Source: Macrostomum lignano (taxonomy: Eukaryota). From it: a DNA stretch of 64,000 nucleotides. The notes beneath the pieces were generated by a model that worked only from the letters and a program-made list of their open reading frames with translations, did not search any database and had not been told where the DNA came from. Each line of letters opens with the position of its first letter. The first letter of the stretch is position 1. This document shows, one piece after another, positions 1 through 16,438 of the stretch. The DNA lies in assembly GCA_002269645.1 (NCBI GenBank), contig NIVC01000716.1, positions 393,426-457,425 on the forward strand, given 5' to 3'. The translations under genes were made by a program, and so were the position numbers.

Positions 1-3000
1 GCCCGCTCGCGCACGATGGCGTAGCGAATAATGTAGCGGTCGCGCACGCTGGCGGGCATGAGGTGCAGGTCACGTGATTGGTTAATCCGGCACACCAGCA
101 GCCGGCTGAGGGCGTCACTGTCCTGCAGGAGTATTATTTCATACGTATAGATGGAAGCCAACTGAGAATCCCACAAGTTAAAATGCGCAAATAAGTAGAA
201 ATAAGTAGTAGATTCCCACCCGAAATCGGAAGCACACTAGCGAGAAGCGAGTCTTGGCGGCCAGCTGAAATCTCCCATCCTTCAGAAGCTGGGACTCAAA
301 GCTCTGTGCAAGTCGGCAGTGCTGGAAGGAAGAGATAAAGAACAGCGACTTTAAAAGCTAATTAGCTATTGTTTGTGCATGCATGCCACCATGAACAGTC
401 ATTTGTGTTCATGGTAGCATACCACTAGGCTCACCAGTCTGATGTGCCGCTGCAGCCCCTCGACACCGTACAGTCGAATCACAAACCAGAGCTTGAGTGA
501 GCGAAATCGTCGACTTAACGGGATGCCCCAGTCTTTAAGGTCGCAGATCTGCTCTGAGAAATCCGCAAGTCTATGCATGGTTAGTTCAAGCTAAAAACCC
601 AAGTATGACTTTAATTATATATTTTTCTTTTAAAATATATACTTTAGACTCATGAAAAATTTTAAGTTAGCTCTAAAGCTGTAGTATCCATAAGCCGGAA
701 GGCATATTATTAGCATATAAAGCACGCATGGAAAAATGACAGCGAGGACTGTATTAATCCGAGTGTAGAAGGTTTAACACTAGGAATCAAAAACCAGGGG
801 AGATTCCTCCCTGACAATTTTTGCTTCACCAGAACGGAGCAACGCAGGTACACGAAATTCAAGAACGACTAATTGGCTAATTGGCTAATTGGCGCACAGG
901 GGTGAATTGAAGACACCAGCGCTTATGGTAAAAGTCGGAGCTTCTGGCAGAGTTGTTGAATTTCTCCCACGGTTTGAAAGTCTGGCGACTTGATTCTTGT
1001 TCGCGAAGGTGCGCAACAAAACAATTAGTCTGTGTTCTTAAATTTCGCGTGCCTGCATGGCTGCGCTGCTCCGTTCTGGCGCAGCAAATTTTCAGGGGTC
1101 AAGGTGCTAGATTTACTGTTACGAGCATAAAATGCATTCCTTTTAACAATAAAATCAGAAATATTAAAGGACTCTCAAAGAAACCAGTCAATGATGTTTT
1201 ATGCATGCAGTTTTATGTTGTTGTCCAGCATGGCTTTTCAGTCTCACCTTAATGAGCAAAAACTCACCCAGTGGATTCGAAATCGGAGCGTCATCGACCG
1301 GAATCGATGCCCGAGGACCGGAAACAAAGGCGTCCTTCAGCTTGGATTGACTTTTAACCCTGTGAGTGTGTGCAGAAGTGGTGCTGTCTATTAGATAGTT
1401 ACTCTACAGATCGCATATTACTGGTTACTCTTATTTTTTACTACAAAAAATTGGTTTCCCACTCACCAGAGTACGCTGGCGTCGAAAGTGCACAGCAGCC
1501 ATTTGCTCGGATTGAAGTTGAACGAGTCGACTAACTGGAATGCCGAAAATAGATTCATAATATTCAAGCTGCTGGGTTTATAGTGCAACATCTGATCATA
1601 TGTTATGAATGGCTACTATGCTCATAAAATACAAATATCAAAAACCTCAATGCCTTGTAAGAGCGGACGGAACTCCGGGCACACCAGGGCGCCACCGGAG
1701 TACGCGGCGTCAACGTGGCACCAGAGCTGCTCGCGATGACAAACTGCGCCGACATCGCTCAGGTTGTCGCAAGAAGCGCAGGCTGTGGTGCCGAGGACAG
1801 CGCATACCTGAGAAAGCATGGATAGCGTGGGTGTGAAGATGCCATGTTGGAATGCGTGAGTTGCCTAGTTGCTCTTTTAGTGTGGTCGCTACTCAATTAA
1901 GTCGTTGAGTAATCAAAAGTCAATATGTCTAGATTCTGAGTACTTTATGACATTTTTCATTGTTAATTAGGGCTCAATTGATCTCGCATAAAATTTAAAT
2001 GAATAGATAGGTAGAGACCCAAGGGGTAGAGAAAACGGACCAAATATGTACCGTAGGTTACTGTCAGAGGAAGAATGACGATGAACGAGATTAGAAGGAA
2101 ACAGACAACATCCTCTCAAGCAAGCACTGAGCGCAACTGCGCCAGCTCACGTAAAATGGCACCAGGCCGAGCTGCCGGTCCTCCAGTACCGCAGATTCAA
2201 GCAGGTCGCATCGCAGGGCCAGATTTTCGTCGTCGTAGCCGAGCCGGCGCAGCCGGACTCCGCAGATCACGGCCGCTTTGTCAACGCACGGGTGCGCCAG
2301 CTGGGAGCAGTAAGCCACCAGCCGCGACACCGGCAGCGGCTCAGCATCCTTGCCGATGAGCTGCGTCAGCTTCTCCTTGCGAGCGGCGAGCATGCTGACC
2401 AGGACGCAGTCACTCGCTGAGCCCTACGCGGTGTTCGAGGGACATAAGTTTTATCGAATATTCTGCTGATTAAATATTCAAGTTTTACTTCTTTTCTTAA
2501 CTGTTTGAGAGACAATTATTCGAAACTACATGTATCATTATTTGAGCCTAAAATACTAAAAAAGTTTTCGTGTAGTGTAGTGTAAAACCTAAAGGCGAAA
2601 GTATGCTACACCTGATGACACCAACTTGCCACTCATGCCTGATCTGAGCCTGGACTCGCAAAGCTGCGGTTTTCTTTGCCTATGCGGCTCTGCTTATATC
2701 ACGTGACTTGGACAGACAACTACGGAACTATCTTCTTAGGACGTTGATAAACTTTCTTTCACTTTTCGAAGCAAACTGCATCAGGATTTGAGGCTTAAGG
2801 CCAGCTTTTACACAGGCAGTCTTGGATGCTGACTACAGCCCACCCGCACGGCTTGGGTTCGAATACCAGGCAGCACGGCCAGCCATTGTAAGCCGACTTT
2901 CCCGGCAGCAGGGTGCCTGAGTCACAGGCATCGTGAGGCATGTAAGCTTGTCTCTAATCTAATCGGCCGGAATCAATCGCATAAACTACTCCAAGAAATG

Positions 3001-3589
3001 CCAAGCCAAACCTGCAGCGCTCCACCGCCAATGCCGCTGTCATTGCGGAAGTGCGCCGGCATGCCCATCATCTCCGCTAGCCAGTCGAGCATCAAGCGCT
3101 CCAGCTCGGTTAGAGCCGGGTTCGAGCGCCAGGTGAAACCGACCCCAAAGCTGGAGGAGAGCAGGTCGCCAAGGACTGAGGCGTAGCTGATTCCGATCGG
3201 GAAGTAGGCGTTGAAGTCAGGGTGGAGCCAGTGAGCAGTCTGAGGGCAGAAAGTGTTAGCGGTCATGCGGTGGAAATTACGAGCTAAAATCAAGGCCACC
3301 CCAAAAATGACTGTCCGCTAACTGAATGGTAGTGAGTGGGAGTGAGGCGGAGCGCCATAAGTTTAAAAGATGTGCGTCATACCCCGCTGAGTATGTGCTC
3401 CTCCACGTCGCTCATGACCCGCTCCCAGGTCTCTGGCTGGTCCGGCGGTCTCAGGGGCAGCCTTTGCCGAAGATACCCAGGCAGCACTCGAGGCATCGCC
3501 TCCCGCCTGTTGCCATTCAAACTCTCGATGTAGTCGGCAATAAAATCAATCAGCTGCTTGCCGCATCGGCGAAATTCTGCGGCATCCAT
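1..3589 (-). CDS. Group II PLP-dependent decarboxylase (aromatic L-amino-acid/tyrosine/histidine decarboxylase family), 10 exons in window, 3' end beyond position 1
   Basis: Exons 3589-3383, 3239-3012, 2423-2151, 1807-1646, 1534-1467, 1359-1268, 553-435, 321-220, 122-1 join in frame at GT-AG sites. Motifs: [57 protein letters not shown]-lysine motif [32 protein letters not shown]. Confidence 0.95.
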
Positions 3590-3805
3590 TGCGTCAAGTT
3601 GCAGCTCTATGCATCGGCAAAAGAGGAATAAATGCTTTCTGCTTCGTTTTGCTTGGCTTATTAATCCCTCTTGTAGTCTATGGCAGAGGAACTGGGCTCC
3701 GGCTTCTATTTTATTATTAGAACATTGCAAGTGCAAACGTACTCAACGGAAGTTATAGTAAATGAGTTTTGGTGTAAAATGTTGAGCTAATTGAATTAAT
3801 TTTCA

Positions 3806-7800: not shown

Positions 7801-10800
7801 CATAGAACTTTCTCCCTACGACCTCCGAAAATCTCGGTGGCCCTGCCGTCGCCCTGATGGAATTCGACCACGCAGTTTATGTGCTGACGGCTGGGTCGCT
7901 GCTCCTCGCCTCCAACAAGACCAGTCTGTTCAGCCCTAGCCCAAGCGCCTGCTGCCTGCCGGTGCTGCAGCGACTCGACGACCGCCTGGCAGCTGGAGAA
8001 ATTCGCAGCTGCGTGGTGGACCGGCGCCAGGCCACAGCTTTTTTCAGCGTGCCGCACGGCTGCAAGCTGATCAGCCTGGCCTTCCCTGTGCCTCCGAGTG
8101 ACAGTGAGGCGGCCAGCGCTGCCACCTCGGGCTGCCCGGTGCTGCAGGAACGCCTGTACGCTGTTGCGAGCTGCTCTGATGGGGCCGCGGCTGTGCCATG
8201 TAAGACATCCCGTGGTTAAGATCATGATACTCAGTGGTGTGGTGTATCGCCTAACGCTAAAGGCCTTCATAACTTGTGGTGAAGATGAGCTGAAGCTGAC
8301 CGATGTGAAATGTTGTGATAAAAATGCCGTGATTCAATAAAAGAACACGGAGAAAACGAGTATTGCGCGAGCAATTAAGAGGAATAATTTGATCCGTAAT
8401 TTATTATTTACTCAAAAATTCTATGCCAATGCATTTTGACCAGTTCGGTCATCTTCAGGGCAGCTTTTGAAGATAGACAGCAAGTTATATTCGTACATGT
8501 ATTTAATAACAACACGATTTACAGTATAATTTGTGCAACAAAGGGTCAGGCTTAGGTAGAAGAAGGGGCAGAGAGAGAGAATAGGGTGTAGTAGTCTACA
8601 ACCCTACCCAGAACACGTTGAGTTAATGGCTGGCACCCCCTATAGCTGACTGACAGTTCAAATTAGGCTTCTGAGCTTGAACTGTTCAAAAGAGTCTCAG
8701 CGTTCAGCTCTGGATCACTTTTTTGCACTGTGTTGTCTCAGGATGTCTGCAGCTTGAAGTCCCGTTTCCCTCTACCGCTTACTGCAGGTGTCGTTAATAA
8801 GTTTCAGTGCTCTGAAGAGCAGAGTCTCCTATATAGTGAAAATCAAGCGACACCTGCACACTAGGACTAAGGAGCATTGGACTATGAGTAAAAGATCAGC
8901 AATCCAAGAACACCTGCTCACTCACGTGTGATTCATGAGAACGTTCGCAATTTCTATGATCCAATAACTTCATTCCCCAAAACTCTAGCTGAGAAATAGA
9001 TTTCAAAAACCTTTTCTATTATTTAAGAGCTCATATCGGATGCCGATCTGAAGTTCTTAAATGTTACAACTGGACTGGTTTGTGCGGCGAAAGTGCACAA
9101 ACCGGCTTTAGTGCCCAGCGCGTTGATTGTACATCGCCGCCTGCCCCCCCCCCCTTGGGTGGCAGGGGTGTTTTTAAACCCCCGTCGCGCTCTACTGGCG
9201 GCTCACTTTGCCTTCTCGCAGTGAATTTTTTATTTTTGCTGACGCCGCGTCTCGGCTGCACGAGGGCAGTCAGTTGTTGAATTTTTTGCTGCGCTTTTAT
9301 GGCTCATTGATGCGTCTCACCAATTGCTCGCTTTCCCGGCACACGCTTTCTGCTGCCACATCCGCTTTTCTCCGTTTTCAGGTCGCCAGACTGCGCCAGA
9401 CCACCTCAGCCACCGAGCCCGTGAACTACTCGGTTCCTCCTACGCGGCCCGCTCGAAAAGCGCCATCAGCTCACACGTGCGGTCCTGGCGCGCGTACTGC
9501 TCAGCCAAGGGACTCGACCCCGCCGGGTGTACTGTGTCCACGCTGCTAAACTACCTGGCTGGCCTCACGGGCACGCGCCTGCGAGCCTACAGTAGCGTTC
9601 GCGGTCATGTCAGCTCGCTTTCACTGTGGTTTCGGCTGAACGGCGCTCAGGACCTGACGAAGCACACCCTCACCCAGCATCTGCTGCGGGGCTGCAAGCG
9701 AGCGCTGGGGCTTCAGGTCAACCAGAAGCTACCAATGTCTCCGTCGGTGCTGCAAAAGCTTTGGTCTCTGGTTGACAAGGGCGACAATCGGCAACTGGCC
9801 TGCTGGGCGGTCACCATCACTGCCTGGTGGGGAATGCTGCGAAAATCATCACTCCTTCTATCGTCGCCTCAGTTGGGTAGTGGGATGAAGGTGCAGAATC
9901 TGACACCTCACCGTTGCGGCCTCCTCTTAAGCGTGGACTTTGGCAAGACTATTCAGTTCCGTGATCGAGTCCACCACGTCCTGCTTCCGAAGTTCCCCGC
10001 CTGCCCCGCGCTCTGCCCGGTAGTGGCGATTCGCCGACATCTGTGTGTCAACAAGCTGGCGATGGCCGAGGCGCCACTCTGGTCCTTCATCGATCGCAAT
10101 GGACAGCGGCGCCATCTAGCTGCTCGGGACTTGGACCGGTTTCTTGACTCTAAGCTGCAGAGGGCTGGGTGTGGCGGCAAGCTCTACTCGGCTCACAGCC
10201 TGCGTCGAGGTGGAGCCACCTGGGCAGCTCGCATGGGCCTGCCGGTGGCGGAGATCCAGCGGATCGGCGACTGGAAGAGTTCGGCGGTGGAGCGCTACTT
10301 GCCCCGCTCGGGTGTTGCCACTGCTGCGGCCTCTCTGCATTTTTTTTCCGCCCTTAGTGCTCATTTTTGACGGTGGTCTTCCCGCTGATTTGTTTTTTGC
10401 TCAATGCCTAGCTGCTGCTCTTATCCCCCGTTGTGTTTGGCTTTGGAGGCCTGCTTCGTTTCTGTGCCAAGTTCGTGTTTTAATTGCCTTTGTTGCTGGA
10501 AGCACTAATGGACTGGTTTGTGCGGCGAAAGTGCACAAACCGGCTTTAGTGCCCAGCGCGTTGATTGTACATCGCCGCCTGCCCCCCCCTTGGGTGGCAG
10601 GGGTGTTTTTAAACCCCCGTCGCGCTCTACTGGCGGCTCACTTTGCCTTCTCGCAGTGAATTTTTTTTCTTTTTCGTGTTAAGTTTGCTTTAAGCCAAAT
10701 ATACTCGTAGATTGAAGTTCGAAACACTTTTTTATTGACGGAGGCCTGCTTCGTTTCTGTGCCAAGTTCGTGTTTTAATTGCCTTTGTTGCTGGAAGCAC

Positions 10801-11086
10801 TAATCAACACTTTCCTGCAGGTGCTATGGCTTGGGACCCCACCACTGAGCACCTGCTGGTGCTGGAGTGGGGCTCCGAGAACAACGGCGTCCTCATCACC
10901 GTGGATTTCTCACCCGACGATGGAATCAGCAGCTCCAGACCGGATCGAGAAACCCCGCAGTCCGAGGCGTGGTTGCTGCAGCGGACTTCCGAGAAGCTGC
11001 CCGTTGTGAAGACCTTTGGTCCGCAGGTGCTGAACCCGATGGCGCAGCGGCTGGGTCTGAAGATCTCAGGGGGTCATGCCTGCTGA
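4802..11086 (+). CDS. Uncharacterised multi-exon protein: charged, disordered N-terminus, then beta-strand-rich (possibly propeller-like) region
   Basis: Exons about 4802-5027, 5407-5617, 6042-6246, 6509-6650, ~6970-7190, 7806-8199, 10821-11086. GT-AG sites and phases are consistent except one unresolved junction (6650 to ~6970). No family recognised. Confidence 0.7.
7570..7809 (+). repeat. Dispersed interspersed repeat, related to 30005-30121
   Basis: CAGAACTCAGAGAAGTTAGAAGGCTTAAGCTCCGGCGTACACAGTG resembles the 30051-30099 segment. CTTTCCGCGACACCATAGAACT (7788-7809) matches 30100-30121 at 21/22. Confidence 0.6.
9071..9231 (+). repeat. Split direct repeat A1
   Basis: Matches 10509-10666; contains 9-bp inverted repeat GGTTTGTGC...GCACAAACC. 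Confidence 0.95.
9238..9320 (+). pseudogene. Probable C-terminal remnant of the RT-RNase H ORF (ADAASRL motif)
   Basis: GCT GAC GCC GCG TCT CGG CTG immediately after A1 resembles the AD-x-LSR motif that ends DIRS/Ngaro RNase H. Its frame overlaps the YR frame as in full-length elements. Confidence 0.55.
9324..10370 (+). CDS. Tyrosine recombinase (DIRS/Ngaro-type phage-integrase fold)
   Basis: 348-codon open frame with N-terminal binding-domain-like region (SHVRSWRAYC...LLNYLAGL). Catalytic residues are intact: R (GMLRKS), K (FGKTIQ), HSLRRG, W (GDWKS), Y (ERYL). No ATG near the 5' end; acceptor-like TTTTCTCCGTTTTCAG ends at 9381. Confidence 0.93.
   Translation: MLAFPAHAFCCHIRFSPFSGRQTAPDHLSHRARELLGSSYAARSKSAISSHVRSWRAYCSAKGLDPAGCTVSTLLNYLAGLTGTRLRAYSSVRGHVSSLSLWFRLNGAQDLTKHTLTQHLLRGCKRALGLQVNQKLPMSPSVLQKLWSLVDKGDNRQLACWAVTITAWWGMLRKSSLLLSSPQLGSGMKVQNLTPHRCGLLLSVDFGKTIQFRDRVHHVLLPKFPACPALCPVVAIRRHLCVNKLAMAEAPLWSFIDRNGQRRHLAARDLDRFLDSKLQRAGCGGKLYSAHSLRRGGATWAARMGLPVAEIQRIGDWKSSAVERYLPRSGVATAAASLHFFSALSAHF
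10445..10509 (+). repeat. Split direct repeat B1
   Basis: 65 bp identical to 10740-10804; abuts A2 and shares the T at 10509. Confidence 0.95.
10509..10666 (+). repeat. Split direct repeat A2
   Basis: Matches 9071-9231. Confidence 0.95.
10740..10804 (+). repeat. Split direct repeat B2
   Basis: Identical to 10445-10509; forms the right end of the element. Confidence 0.95.
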
Positions 11087-12401
11087 GTCACAATGGAATT
11101 CGACTCCAGTGCCAGCGACCGATCGACTGACTACCGTTGTTCAGGATTTATCTGTCTCATTGTTTCTATTCTCCCGTTAGACGCGTATATATCATACACT
11201 TCATGATTATTTTGAACCAATGCAGTTCCACAGAATCAGATAAACAGTTTTACTAATTCGCTGAAAGTAATAAAATCTTCTAATTAAAGTAAAAAAAACG
11301 ATGGATCCTTCCAAACCCAAAGAGCATGTGGCTTTCTATTTTAGTACTCTAAAGTTAAATTCTGCAAGCAAGGAAGAAGTCCAAGCGTGCCGTCAAACAC
11401 AGGCGAATCTAACACTGGAACGATTTTAGAACGTGATGTAACCGCCCTTGACGTCCGTCCGCTCCATTCCGAGGCGAACGTATGACCATAGGGGGCAATG
11501 ACCGTAGGCTGCCTATGACCGGGCAATGACCTGATGGACCTCCAGCACCAGACTGTCCTGCCCACATGATTGATAGCTTTGGTAGCGCTTTCGTGACCAG
11601 AGGGCCAAGGACCCACATGGACCCCACCTGTAGCCAAGGTGCAATAGTTGGTCACTCGGACATAGCATGACCGAGTGGCTGCCACCACTCTATGTGACCT
11701 GGCGCACCTGGATCTTACTACCAAACCTTTCGAGGCTAGAGCCCCGCCTGGATTGGTTACCAGGTGATTTAGGCTAACAGGGGAGACGCATGCAGCCGAG
11801 TACAGGGACTCTGCTTGGGGCATGATCGGGAACTCTGGGATCAATCTGGAGGATTTCTCAGCAGGGGATCCTTTGTGGCTGTGAACGAGGCGGACTTACG
11901 GTTTCAATTACTAAGAGTAGTGTGAGGCGAACATGTACTAGCTATAGTTTAGATTGCTCAGGGCGAAGGGACGCGTAAGCAGGGTGCTGCAACCTTCCTG
12001 CTGCCATTCTGTGCCAAGACCCGCTACTTCCCTCTACTGCACGCACATACGGACCCGCAGCACGCACACACAGGCGAGCTTTGCACGGGGAGAGGCCATT
12101 AGCTTACCCAAACTTCCTTATGCTTTGCCACCCAGGGAGAAAGGCTTAGCAAGCCATCAATGAAATGATGGTGAAAGCACAGAAGTGAAAGTGTGAATAA
12201 TGAGGAGCTTAGTATTGGTTAATAATTAGGCCCTTGGGCAAAATAAACAAGCAATTAGGCGGCTTCCCTATTGAATAAAATACAGCAAAGATACGGTAAC
12301 GCAATTGGCTCAGTTCTCTAAGCAAGCAATGGGAAATAAGCAAACCCCTGATAAGCAAAGGCAATTAGAGCACAAATCAGTACAGGAACTCACCGGCAGC
12401 T

Positions 12402-14362: not shown

Positions 14363-16438
14363 TCAGACTTTCTTGGCTGCGAACTCTTTCGTGGCCCAGA
14401 AGACGTCCCACGGCCAAGACTTGAAGTCCTCGCCCAGCCGCACCAACCGGGTGCCGACCAGGTTGTGCGGCAGCAGGCCGTGTGAATTGTAGAACTCGAT
14501 GATGTCGGGAGCTATATCCGAGTGGTGCATTTTCGTGCCTATCCACTCCATCATGATCACGGACACTTTGAAGCGCTTGAAGACTTTGGCACCGGTGGCT
14601 TTGACCAGCCACTCCTGCGCTTCCATGTCGACCTTCACTACGAGCTCGCTGACGCCGGAGAAGCAGCCGTCTCCGACGGCGATCTCGTCAAGGGAAGCCG
14701 TTCGCACGTCGATAAAATCAGATATCCTGGTGTCGCCTTTGCTCGCGGGCCCGCCACCTCCAGTGTTGCAGGTGCTGGGCAGGGCGATGTTCATCTTGCC
14801 ATTGCTCTTCAGACCAAGGGCGTTCCAGTACACCCGCATTCGGTCTTGAAAGCCGTTTGCTGTCACCGAGGCGAAGAGGCGGATGGAGTTCTGCAGAATT
14901 CAAAATCGGATTGCGGTGAAGGGTGCGCGTGCACTCTTGATGCACATCTGAATTTCGATGCTTGAAAGGATCGCGCACCAAAACTTTGTTTTGAGAGATT
15001 TTTTGAGTCTTCCTAAAACTCAGAATGTTTCAATTATAAACTTTACGAACAGTTGAACTATTGAAATAGGCAACTGATCATGTTGGCGACAGTCATATTG
15101 AGAAGTGCCTAATCGTCCTCAATTTTTTTACCTTTTTAGAGAGTAGCCAGCCTTTTTGCATAATATACGCTCGTACGAGTATTAGCTTGACTTCACTTGC
15201 TGCAATGGGTTCCGGGCATCCGACGTCGAGGCGTCGACGCCGATTCCCCTACCCCCTGGCGATCAGTACTGGCTGCTTCGGTGTCTTTATGGACGAGATT
15301 TCAGCTGATTCGAGCAGGTAATGCTGTTTTGAAGATTTACAGCAAACTCCGGTCTCTACGTCCGGTCCTCGGATCTTTTGAAGCTTCAACATGGCAATCC
15401 GGTCTGCTCAAGGTTTGTCTCTTCTTTTCTTTTTCCTCTCTCCTCTCTCATCCCCTTTCTCACCTATCTCCTCTCTACTCTTCTCTCATATCGTATCTCC
15501 TCTTTTCTCTTCTCCCTCCTCCATTCCGTCCCCTTTTCTCTCATCTCATCTCATCTCATCTCATCTCAAGTAAAAAAAATTTCATTGTCTAACCACAACA
15601 TAAGCTACAGCTGGTTTACCTGGTAGAAGGCGTCGATCGCCACAACCTGGCGTCCCATCTGCGCAGCGTGCAGGCTGTAAGCTCCCAGCTGGCTGCCGAC
15701 GTCCAGAAGCCCTGCGCCTGGCAGCAGCTCCAGAGCGCTGCGAATGAAATTTGTCTGCTCCGACTCCCACACGTTCTTGCTTGTGATGTCCCGTGAGATC
15801 GTGTCCCAGGAAGGGTGAACCATCATGGTGATGTAGCCGGTGGGGTGTCTCAGACGGGCCGTCTTGAACTCGCTGCGGTCCAGGTGGGCGATTGTTGCAA
15901 TGCGGCAGATGGCGGGGTTCGGATTCGAGGTGCAGCTTTTGTCCAGCTGCAATGCTCGCAATTAAAAAAGCTGATTTTTCAAGTGGAGGTCTATTGAAGC
16001 TGCTTAAAGGCCACGAATCTTTTCGAAAAAAATTCCACTTTGAGTTGCTTGAGCAAGAGGCACTCATAAGAAGTGTTCCTATTAAACATTTCTATCAAAA
16101 TGGCTCATCCTCAAGTCTATCAATTGAAACCCAAATACAAGCAAAGTTAATTGCTTCTATAAAAACAAGTAACACCTGAAACTCACCGCCTCTTGCAAAA
16201 ATTTCACTTTGAAGCACGTCGTTTTTGTCTTCACTTGCTTTGTTGCGGCGGTCTGGGCGGCTTGTGCAGATTGGGTGACAGGAGCTTTCGGAGACATTAG
16301 TGAGGCTTCATTGACAAAGGTTTGCTTTGCAGACGCTTGGGCATCAGAGGCTTGGGCGCCAGAAGCTTGGGCAATTATCAAAGAGGCCTCAGCTGCTTCA
16401 GATTTCGAGATCCGGACGCTGCTGGAGCCATTTTTCAT
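14363..16438 (-). CDS. FkbM-family (Methyltransf_21-like) SAM-dependent methyltransferase
   Basis: Exons 16438-16187, 15946-15620, 14890-14363 join in phase 0. Motifs: LLDVGSQLGAYSLHAA, VVAIDAFYQN, VVKVDMEAQE. A hydrophobic stretch lies in frame upstream of the ATG, so the true start may be further 5'. Confidence 0.85.

What the first reader, a model, noticed from the sequence alone, without database searches (positions are those of the whole stretch)
9071..10804. Minimal recombinase-only element with Ngaro/TOC1-type split direct repeats
Seen: a 1,734-bp unit arranged A1(161)-YR-B1(65)A2(158)-73-bp spacer-B2(65). B1 and B2 are identical and A1/A2 differ only in a poly-C run, so the copy is very young. 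The only coding capacity is an intact tyrosine recombinase. Known: this split-repeat layout defines YR retrotransposons (Ngaro, PAT, TOC1), which normally also encode gag, RT and RNase H, while RT-less YR elements (Cryptons) lack such repeats. Inference: this is either a semi-autonomous retroelement that borrows gag/RT in trans but brings its own integrase, or a circle-forming DNA element. The B1A2 junction (GCACTAAT/GGACTGG) is the expected circle junction.
Basis: partly seen in the sequence, partly recalled or inferred. Interest (0 to 1): 0.88.

Follow-up and report, generated by a model that had tools for sequence, protein, structure and literature searches.

The report
Internally deleted Ngaro retrotransposon copy
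This is a recently inserted 1.7-kb copy of a Ngaro-type retrotransposon in the flatworm Macrostomum lignano that has lost its gag and reverse-transcriptase genes by an internal deletion, keeping all its repeats and the recombinase reading frame; this is an ordinary kind of defective mobile element, not a new class.

Summary
B1 and B2 are identical, and A1 and A2 differ only in a poly-C run.

The window comes from Macrostomum lignano contig NIVC01000716.1. A second, syntenic contig of the same assembly has an empty site exactly at 9071/10804. This shows a real insertion of 1,733 bp with no target duplication, sharing a single T with the target.

The element is not a designed "recombinase-only" unit.
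- Directly after A1 come about 26 codons of the C-terminus of an RNase H ORF. They match a full-length M. lignano Ngaro and the closest metagenomic relative.
- In 35 of 37 related loci an RT/RH ORF lies just upstream of the recombinase.
- The paralogous contig carries a complete 4.5-kb Ngaro with the same layout.
- About 2.7 kb (leader, gag, RT and most of RNase H) is therefore deleted, starting at the 3' edge of A1.

The recombinase frame is open and its catalytic residues are intact. It has no ATG for its first ~160 codons. It overlaps the RNase H frame in the -1 register, as in the full-length relative, so it probably depends on the deleted upstream ORF for translation.

Whether this short form has multiplied could not be tested with these tools.

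The parts
9071..9071 (+). The single T shared by the target and the element (left junction). The same T occurs at 10804 and once in the empty site.
   Evidence: Empty site in L085 reads ..TTGCAACT|CAACACTTT..; occupied site reads ..TTACAACT|GGACTGG...CACTAAT|CAACACTTT...
9072..9231 (+). Repeat A1 (160 bp). It begins with a 12-bp hairpin with a GAAA loop (9072-9107) and ends in GAATTTTTT.
   Evidence: Direct repeat with 10510-10667. Fold. The same end motif GAATTTTTTT closes A in the full-length relative in L085.
9225..9237 (+). Internal deletion junction. The 3' edge of A1 is joined to the RNase H codons I-F-A-D. The hexamer ATTTTT occurs on both sides of the junction.
   Evidence: A1/A2 homology stops at the T-run. 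Homology to the RNase H tails of L001 and L085 starts at ATTTTTGC.
9232..9309 (+). Remnant of the C-terminus of the RT/RNase H ORF (frame 1: IFADAASRLHEGSQLLNFLLRFYGSL). The frame stays open to the stop at 9547-9549.
   Evidence: tblastn with the L001 RH tail gives 78% identity over 27 aa, E 2e-10. BLASTP gives 54% over 57 aa to L001 and 46% over 52 aa to the RT/RH ORF of the full-length L085 Ngaro.
9282..9288 (+). The only canonical X XXY YYZ heptamer (T TTT TTG) in the RH-frame/YR-frame overlap. It is a candidate -1 frameshift site and lies upstream of the only frame-1 ATG (9310).
   Evidence: Scan. No notable downstream structure.
9243..10370 (+). Tyrosine recombinase reading frame (stop-to-stop 9243-10367, stop 10368-10370). 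Catalytic R173, K208, H291, R294, W317 and Y325 are present (numbering of ORF 9324-10370). The first in-frame ATG is at 9735.
   Evidence: The family profile matches Cre over its full length, E 1e-16. Pfam Phage_integrase scores 24.9 bits, below the cut-off of 27.1.
10445..10509 (+). Repeat B1 (65 bp), ending in CACTAAT.
   Evidence: 100% identical to 10740-10804. The B end motif CACTAAT is shared with the L085 Ngaro.
10510..10667 (+). Repeat A2. With B1 it forms the internal B|A junction CACTAAT|GGACTGG.
10668..10739 (+). AT-rich spacer between A2 and B2.
   Evidence: Equivalent spacers of 41-72 bp occur in relatives L003, L028 and L045, and 68 bp in L085.
10740..10804 (+). Repeat B2. This is the right end of the element.

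Best explanation
The 1,733-bp unit is a non-autonomous, internally deleted copy of a Ngaro-type tyrosine-recombinase retrotransposon of Macrostomum lignano.

A full-length parent would be about 4.4 kb, laid out as A1, leader, gag, RT/RNase H, YR, B1A2, spacer, B2. The parent lost everything from the first base after A1 to about 26 codons before the end of the RT/RNase H ORF.

Because the left breakpoint coincides with the repeat boundary, I infer that the deletion arose by a template switch during reverse transcription. The copy would then have arrived already shortened.

It integrated conservatively, with no target duplication, by recombination between the B|A junction of a circular intermediate and a target that shares one T with it (shown by the empty site).

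It keeps every non-coding repeat needed for another round of replication. It would need gag and RT/RNase H from a full-length partner.

Its recombinase frame is intact but has no start codon. In this lineage it overlaps the RT/RNase H ORF in the -1 frame, so I infer it is normally made as a frameshift fusion. With the upstream ORF deleted, this copy's recombinase is probably not translated, so the recombinase would also have to come in trans.
For: Insertion
- The window is NIVC01000716.1 of M. lignano.
- The syntenic contig NIVC01000869.1 has a precise empty site.

Deletion
- An RNase H tail remnant lies directly after A1.
- No RT or gag is found anywhere in the window.
- 35 of 37 related loci with at least 1 kb upstream of the YR have RT/RH directly upstream.

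Full-length relatives with the same layout
- L085 13067-17539 reads A1 167 bp, SAP-domain ORF1, RVT_1 + RT_RNaseH ORF2, YR, B1A2, 68-bp spacer, B2.
- L003 and L028 show the same arrangement.
- The two M. lignano families share the B end CACTAAT and the A end GAATTTTTT. In L085 the gag ATG follows the T-run by 9 nt, which puts the window's breakpoint exactly at the A1 edge.

Recombinase expression
- The YR frame has no ATG before 9735. A1 has no ATG. The only frame-1 ATG (9310) lies downstream of the only canonical heptamer.
- The L085 YR also has no ATG for 139 codons. It overlaps ORF2 by 280 nt in the -1 frame, with T TTT TTA at the point where conservation changes frame.
- 10 of 47 metagenomic relatives also lack an early ATG.

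Age
- The repeats carry no substitutions, while the flanks differ by about 5% between the paralogous contigs.
Against: - Copy number in the genome is unknown, so the copy could belong to an amplified short family rather than being a dead-end product.
- No full-length partner with the same A and B repeats was found. Only about 90 kb of M. lignano DNA could be read, and the protein searches found nothing closer than 49% identity.
- The frameshift route is inferred from ORF geometry and heptamers only. No stimulatory structure was predicted, and the heptamer position is not conserved between the window, L085 and L001.
- The closest relative, L001, has an in-frame ATG. The missing ATG in the window could therefore be a private loss or a different expression strategy.
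- Deletion in place after insertion of a full-length copy cannot be excluded.
Confidence: 0.72

Rival explanations
1. Semi-autonomous short family. The deletion derivative has multiplied, borrows gag and RT/RNase H from a full-length Ngaro, and supplies its own recombinase. The recombinase would be translated by some non-standard route, for example from ATG 9310 plus a frameshift, or by non-AUG initiation.
For: - All cis repeats and the complete recombinase frame with catalytic residues are kept.
- The copy is young and was truly inserted.
- The breakpoint at the repeat edge suggests the short form went through reverse transcription.
- Non-autonomous derivatives of YR retrotransposons are known, such as SIRE from VIPER (PMC6681497).
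Against: - There is no start codon for the recombinase, and no canonical slippery site between ATG 9310 and the frame-1 stop at 9549.
- The spliced-leader acceptor TTTCAG at 9381 would put the leader's ATG in the wrong frame (leader sequence from PMC8629364).
- No second copy was seen in the window or in L084-L086.
- In a copy this young an intact ORF says nothing about selection.
Confidence: 0.17
2. A full-length Ngaro inserted here and later lost 2.7 kb in place, through replication slippage or repair. This copy would then never have moved as a short element.
For: ATTTTT occurs on both sides of the junction. Truncated and incomplete YR retrotransposon copies are the majority in surveyed genomes (PMC3783388).
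Against: - The left breakpoint falls exactly on the A1 boundary defined by A2 and by the full-length relative. For a random deletion this has a chance of well under 1%.
- The repeats show no other decay.
Confidence: 0.07
3. A Crypton-like DNA element that moves only as an excised circle through its own recombinase, with no RNA step.
For: Insertion is conservative and leaves no target duplication. The B1|A2 junction could recombine with the left end to release an A-YR-B circle. This is inference only.
Against: - An RNase H remnant is present.
- The recombinase clade is coupled to RT/RH in 35 of 37 loci.
- The recombinase has no start codon.
- Cryptons lack long split repeats (PMC13465315, PMC4157794).
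Confidence: 0.03
4. Assembly artefact: a collapsed or chimeric representation of a full-length element.
For: The genome is repeat-rich and polyploid (PMC10468722). The poly-C length difference may be a long-read error.
Against: - The junction has no long repeat across which a collapse could occur.
- Both flanks are collinear with the paralogous contig up to the exact element ends.
Confidence: 0.01

Closest known systems
Ngaro-like retrotransposons (order DIRS; Goodwin and Poulter 2004, as summarised in PMC9210276, PMC8547959 and PMC6681497)
   Same: - Split direct repeats in the order A1, ORFs, B1A2, B2.
- A Cre-like tyrosine recombinase as the last ORF.
- Repeats identical at insertion.
- Insertion without target duplication.
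- Full-length relatives in the same genome (L085) and in metagenomes with gag, RT/RH and YR and no methyltransferase.
   Different: This copy lacks gag, RT and nearly all of RNase H, and is 1.7 kb instead of about 4.5-6 kb. In the M. lignano lineage the recombinase frame has no ATG and overlaps RT/RH by about 300 nt.
Non-autonomous or truncated derivatives of YR retrotransposons: SIRE from VIPER, ORF1-deleted and 5'-truncated Ngaros and solo AB repeats in Cafeteria, TOC1 in Chlamydomonas (the last from my own knowledge)
   Same: A defective derivative that keeps the terminal and internal repeats of its parent and could only move with functions supplied in trans (PMC6681497, PMC8547959).
   Different: SIRE and solo AB repeats keep no coding sequence. 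Here the whole recombinase frame is kept while gag and RT are removed cleanly from the A1 edge.
Crypton DNA transposons
   Same: A tyrosine recombinase is the only long ORF, and insertion is conservative at a site with minimal homology.
   Different: Cryptons have no long split direct repeats and no RT/RNase H remnants, and their recombinases belong to other groups (PMC3212892, PMC13465315). This element fails those features.
Cre recombinase of phage P1
   Same: The recombinase family profile aligns with Cre over both domains (E 1e-16). It has the same catalytic set at almost the same positions: R173, K208 (K201 in Cre), H291/R294 (H289/R292), W317 (W315) and Y325 (Y324). The Cre numbering is from my own knowledge.
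   Different: It is eukaryotic and retrotransposon-borne. No loxP-like site is defined, and the crossover occurs at a single shared T.

Membership tests
Ngaro-like YR retrotransposon | Split direct repeats ordered A1, internal region, B1A2, (spacer), B2 | tested here: met
   The same order and a 41-72-bp spacer occur in relatives L003, L028, L045 and L085.
Ngaro-like YR retrotransposon | Tyrosine recombinase ORF at the 3' end of the coding region, belonging to the retrotransposon YR clade | tested here: met
   The catalytic residues are conserved and the profile hits Cre. Homologues lie directly downstream of RT/RH in 35 of 37 loci. No formal tree against reference Ngaro, DIRS, PAT or Crypton sequences was built.
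Ngaro-like YR retrotransposon | Reverse transcriptase / RNase H ORF | tested here: not met
   Only about 26 C-terminal codons remain, and no RT is found in the window. This copy is therefore a deletion derivative, not an autonomous member.
Ngaro-like YR retrotransposon | gag-like ORF1 | tested here: not met
   Absent from this copy. Present in L085 (SAP-domain ORF1) and in L002 and L003.
Ngaro-like YR retrotransposon | No methyltransferase domain (this separates Ngaro from DIRS-like and PAT-like elements) | tested here: met
   ORF2 of the full-length M. lignano relative has only RVT_1 and RT_RNaseH. This cannot be tested on the deleted copy itself.
Ngaro-like YR retrotransposon | Conservative integration without target-site duplication, with ends matching the internal B|A junction | tested here: met
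   Comparison of the empty and occupied sites.
Ngaro-like YR retrotransposon | Replication through an RNA intermediate and a circular cDNA | not testable with these tools
   Needs RNA-seq, outward PCR or a marked-element assay.
Crypton | No long terminal or split repeats, only short direct repeats of a few bp | tested here: not met
   160-bp and 65-bp split repeats are present.
Crypton | No reverse-transcription genes or remnants of them | tested here: not met
   An RNase H tail remnant lies at 9232-9309.
Amplified non-autonomous family (SIRE/TOC1-like) | Several copies at different loci sharing the same internal deletion junction | not testable with these tools
   The M. lignano genome is not searchable at the DNA level here. 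There is one copy in the roughly 90 kb that could be read, and there were no hits in the metagenome, GTDB or viral scans.

The most novel reading that the evidence does not exclude
The short form is a successful semi-autonomous lineage. It would be an amplified 1.7-kb Ngaro derivative that kept its recombinase selectively and expresses it by an unconventional route. It would spread either by borrowing RT in trans or by recombinase-only excision of an A-YR-B circle. That would make it a living intermediate between YR retrotransposons and Crypton-like DNA transposons.
Probability: 0.12. Interest if true: 0.7.

Novelty: new member of a known kind. Interest (0 to 1): 0.3.

Why it matters
By itself this is a defective retrotransposon copy, which is ordinary.

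Its value is as a clean natural record of how Ngaro elements behave. The empty and occupied pair shows base-exact, duplication-free integration at the B|A junction through a single shared nucleotide. The deletion that starts exactly at a repeat edge points to a template switch in the poorly understood replication of split-repeat elements.

Together with the full-length neighbour on the paralogous contig, it also shows two things:
- M. lignano, a transgenesis model, carries young and probably active Ngaro families that I did not find described in the searchable literature.
- The recombinase of these families seems to depend on translation of the RT/RNase H ORF.

If the short form proved to be amplified, it would bear on how recombinase-only transposons and YR retrotransposons are related.

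Tried and rejected
1. A 68-nt mini-intron (ATGC|GTCTCA...TTTTCAG|GT) would put ATG 9310 in frame with the recombinase. I rejected it as weak. The donor does not fit the M. lignano GT[G/A]AG motif (PMC8629364). In L001 the equivalent ATG is already in frame, so conservation does not argue for splicing.

2. Spliced-leader trans-splicing could donate its terminal ATG. The good acceptor at 9381 gives frame 1, not the recombinase frame.

3. I looked for a stimulatory RNA structure downstream of the candidate frameshift heptamers and found none above shuffled controls.

4. I searched for other copies or a full-length partner.
   - An exact look-up of the recombinase protein found nothing.
   - The homologue search found nothing above 49% identity.
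   - The RNase H-tail ORF search gave no hits.
   - The metagenome scan with the protein gave nothing.
   - The junction pattern gave nothing in the GTDB genomes or viral contigs.

5. I looked for RT or gag elsewhere in the window and found none.

6. I tried to see whether the neighbouring genes are annotated on the window's own contig. Look-ups of the 86-aa and 92-aa genes returned only the paralogous contig. No conclusion about the effect of the insertion on the neighbouring gene is possible.

7. Pfam on the recombinase alone was below threshold. The family profile against PDB was needed to establish the fold.
Full report
**Observation**

Reading 8700-11200 and running the repeat finder confirmed the layout.
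- A1 is 9072-9231.
- B1 is 10445-10509 and is identical to B2 at 10740-10804 (65/65).
- A2 is 10510-~10667. It matches A1 except for a poly-C run (11 vs 8 C) and the length of the terminal T-run.
- A 72-73-bp AT-rich spacer separates A2 from B2.
- Diagnostic 35-36-mers of A and B each occur exactly twice in the window, with none expected by chance.
- The only long ORF is 9324-10370 on the plus strand.

**Identity of the ORF**

Pfam gives only a sub-threshold Phage_integrase hit (24.9 bits against a cut-off of 27.1). The protein has 34 homologues in the large protein collection, the best at 49% identity.

An alignment of nine of them keeps R173, K208, H291-x-x-R294 and Y325 invariant, and the window protein also has W317 in the GDW motif. 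A profile of that alignment matches Cre recombinase over both domains with E about 1e-16. It is a Cre-like tyrosine recombinase (YR).

**Genomic company of the recombinase**

The contigs of homologues P0012 and P0008 carry ORF1, RT and YR in that order.

A metagenome scan with the alignment returned 80 further loci. I built RT/RH and YR profiles from these loci and scored all six-frame ORFs. In 35 of the 37 loci with at least 1 kb upstream of the YR, an RT/RH ORF lies directly upstream on the same strand. The loci were picked by YR similarity alone, so this is a fair test: the window's YR belongs to a retrotransposon clade.

Relatives L003, L028 and L045 show the same A1, ORFs, B1A2, spacer, B2 order, with spacers of 59, 72 and 41 bp.

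**The remnant that decides the matter**

Between A1 and the YR, frame 1 reads IFADAASRLHEGSQLLNFLLRFYGSL. This is the conserved C-terminal end of the RT/RNase H ORF.
- In the closest relative, L001, the same peptide follows recognisable RT (YLDDF) and RNase H sequence.
- tblastn gives 78% identity over 27 aa.
- BLASTP gives 54% over 57 aa to L001 and 46% over 52 aa to a full-length M. lignano element.

No RT or gag sequence exists anywhere else in the 64-kb window. The unit is therefore a Ngaro-type element with its leader, gag, RT and most of RNase H deleted. It was not built as a recombinase-only element.

**Host and empty site**

An intronless GPCR ORF at 45591-46619 is 99% identical to a Macrostomum lignano protein. 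Its contig, NIVC01000716.1 of assembly GCA_002269645.1, is 100% identical to window 30600-64000.

The 86-aa ORF just right of the element (10826-11086) is annotated on a different contig, NIVC01000869.1. A pyridoxal-decarboxylase gene lies upstream there, in the same order as in the window.

That contig (L085) aligns with the window at 95-97% up to 8799 and at 90% for 8798-9071. The alignment then jumps to 10804-12112 at 94%.
- The empty site reads ..AAATATTGCAACT|CAACACTTTCTTGCAG.
- The occupied site reads ..AAATGTTACAACT|GGACTGG ... GCACTAAT|CAACACTTTCCTGCAG.

The insertion is 1,733 bp, runs from the first base of A to the last base of B, and made no target duplication. One T is common to the target and to both ends. 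The internal B1A2 junction CACTAAT|GGACTGG is the right end joined to the left end through that single T.

This is the outcome expected if a circular intermediate carrying a B|A junction recombined conservatively with the target. It is analogous to the model in which DIRS elements integrate at a short sequence shared by the circle junction and the target (PMC7192593).

M. lignano is a hidden polyploid (PMC10468722), so the second contig is a homeologue or a haplotype. Either way the insertion is younger than about 5% sequence divergence, while the paired repeats show no substitution in about 215 bp.

**A full-length relative next door**

The paralogous contig has a 6.6-kb block that the window lacks. 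Inside that block, at L085 13067-17539, lies a complete 4,473-bp Ngaro of another family.
- A1 is 167 bp and 100% identical to A2.
- ORF1 has a SAP domain.
- ORF2 has RVT_1 and RT_RNaseH above the Pfam cut-offs.
- ORF3 is a YR 46% identical to the window's.
- B1A2, a 68-bp spacer and B2 follow.

The two families share the B end CACTAAT, the A start ..GGTTTG.GCG and the A end GAATTTTTT(T). In the full-length element the gag ATG follows that T-run by 9 nt. In the window the T-run is followed at once by ATTTTTGCTGACGCC, the RNase H codons I-F-A-D-A.

The deletion therefore starts exactly at the 3' edge of A1 and removes the equivalent of about 2.7 kb. A random in-place deletion would hit that edge with a chance well below 1%. 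I infer a misdirected template switch during reverse transcription, with ATTTTT on both sides of the junction. The short form itself would then have been integrated. This step is inference.

The L085 element's ends share AATGCA with both flanks and with its B|A junction. This fits a short crossover homology.

**Can the recombinase be made?**

The YR frame is open from 9243 but has no ATG until 9735. A1 contains no ATG. The first ATGs of the element are 9299 (a 3-codon ORF) and 9310, which is in the RNase H frame and stops at 9549.

The full-length L085 element shows the same arrangement: no ATG for 139 codons, and a 280-nt overlap with ORF2 in the -1 register. It has the canonical heptamer T TTT TTA at the point where amino-acid conservation passes from the RNase H frame to the YR frame. 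Ten of 47 metagenomic relatives also lack an ATG in the first 100 codons, and most overlap the RT ORF out of frame.

I infer that in this lineage the YR is translated as an extension of RT/RNase H by frameshifting. The support is limited:
- No stimulatory structure was predicted downstream of the heptamers.
- The window's only canonical heptamer (T TTT TTG, 9282) is at a different position from the L085 heptamer.
- L001 has its own in-frame ATG.

If the inference holds, the short element has lost the entry point for translating its YR. The heptamer lies upstream of the only frame-1 ATG. The M. lignano spliced leader ends in ATG and its acceptor motif is YTNCAG (PMC8629364), but the acceptor at 9381 would place that ATG in the wrong frame. 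The claim that the element brings its own integrase is therefore doubtful.

**What could not be settled**

The host genome cannot be searched at the DNA level with these tools.
- The recombinase and the RNase H-tail ORF have no close relatives among the called proteins.
- The pattern scans of metagenomes, prokaryotic genomes and viral contigs were empty.
- No second copy exists in the roughly 90 kb of M. lignano DNA I could read.

Copy number, and hence the choice between a one-off product and an amplified family, remains open.

**Comparison with what is known**

Truncated and incomplete copies are the majority of YR retrotransposons in surveyed genomes (PMC3783388). Non-autonomous derivatives such as SIRE, and ORF1-deleted or solo-AB forms, are documented (PMC6681497, PMC8547959). 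A deletion derivative that keeps only the YR is a new example of that known kind.

I found no paper that mentions Ngaro or DIRS together with M. lignano.

**Verdict**

The novelty is that of a new member of a known kind, and the interest is modest (0.3). The interest lies mainly in the base-exact integration record and the breakpoint at the repeat edge.

Noticed in passing
L085 13067-17539 (NIVC01000869.1, the contig paralogous to the window): An intact-looking full-length Ngaro retrotransposon of 4,473 bp from a second M. lignano family. Its A repeats are 100% identical. Its ORFs carry a SAP domain, RVT_1 plus RT_RNaseH, and a YR. It has an HIV-type T TTT TTA heptamer at 16039 in the RT/RH-YR overlap. 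Its ends are flanked by AATGCA, which is also present at its B|A junction.
   Followed up: partly
window 10805-10828: The element sits 10 nt upstream of a CTGCAG acceptor (10815-10820, matching the M. lignano trans-splice motif YTNCAG). It is 21 nt upstream of the ATG of an 86-aa gene that is annotated on the paralogous contig. Whether the insertion disturbs that gene could not be determined.
   Followed up: partly
window 9072-9107: The first 36 nt of repeat A form a 12-bp hairpin with a GAAA loop, right next to the recombination point. The A repeat folds better than shuffles (z = -2.4). The other M. lignano family keeps the outer CGGTT/AACCG pairing at the same place but not the overall stability.
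   Followed up: partly
L001 (JGI metagenome 3300040801, 2,840-bp contig): The closest relative of the window's recombinase (49% identity) lies on a metagenome contig with frameshifted RT and RNase H ORFs upstream. The contig ends in an 11/9-nt tandem array (TTCACTTGACA). The host is unknown.
   Followed up: no
metagenome loci L002-L070: In this YR clade the recombinase ORF often has no early ATG (10 of 47 loci). It usually overlaps the RT/RH ORF in the -1 or +1 frame, which suggests that fused or coupled translation is widespread among Ngaro-like elements.
   Followed up: partly
window 20600-63600: There is an extraordinary density of minisatellites with periods of 17-84 bp and up to 55 copies, plus long (CAGA)n, (TCTA)n and (CTGT)n runs. 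Many of the long 'ORFs' in the window are just these arrays.
   Followed up: no
window 45591-46619 (+) and 2091-3736 (-): Two host genes were identified. One is the rhodopsin-family GPCR Mlig012459.g2, whose annotated gene model spans about 15 kb. The other is the 5' exons of a pyridoxal-dependent decarboxylase.
   Followed up: partly
L085 11284-13066 and 17540-17856: The full-length Ngaro on the paralogous contig lies inside a further ~2.1 kb of sequence that the window also lacks. It is therefore nested in another insertion, or the window has a deletion there. The flanking DNA is rich in TGCAATGCA motifs.
   Followed up: no
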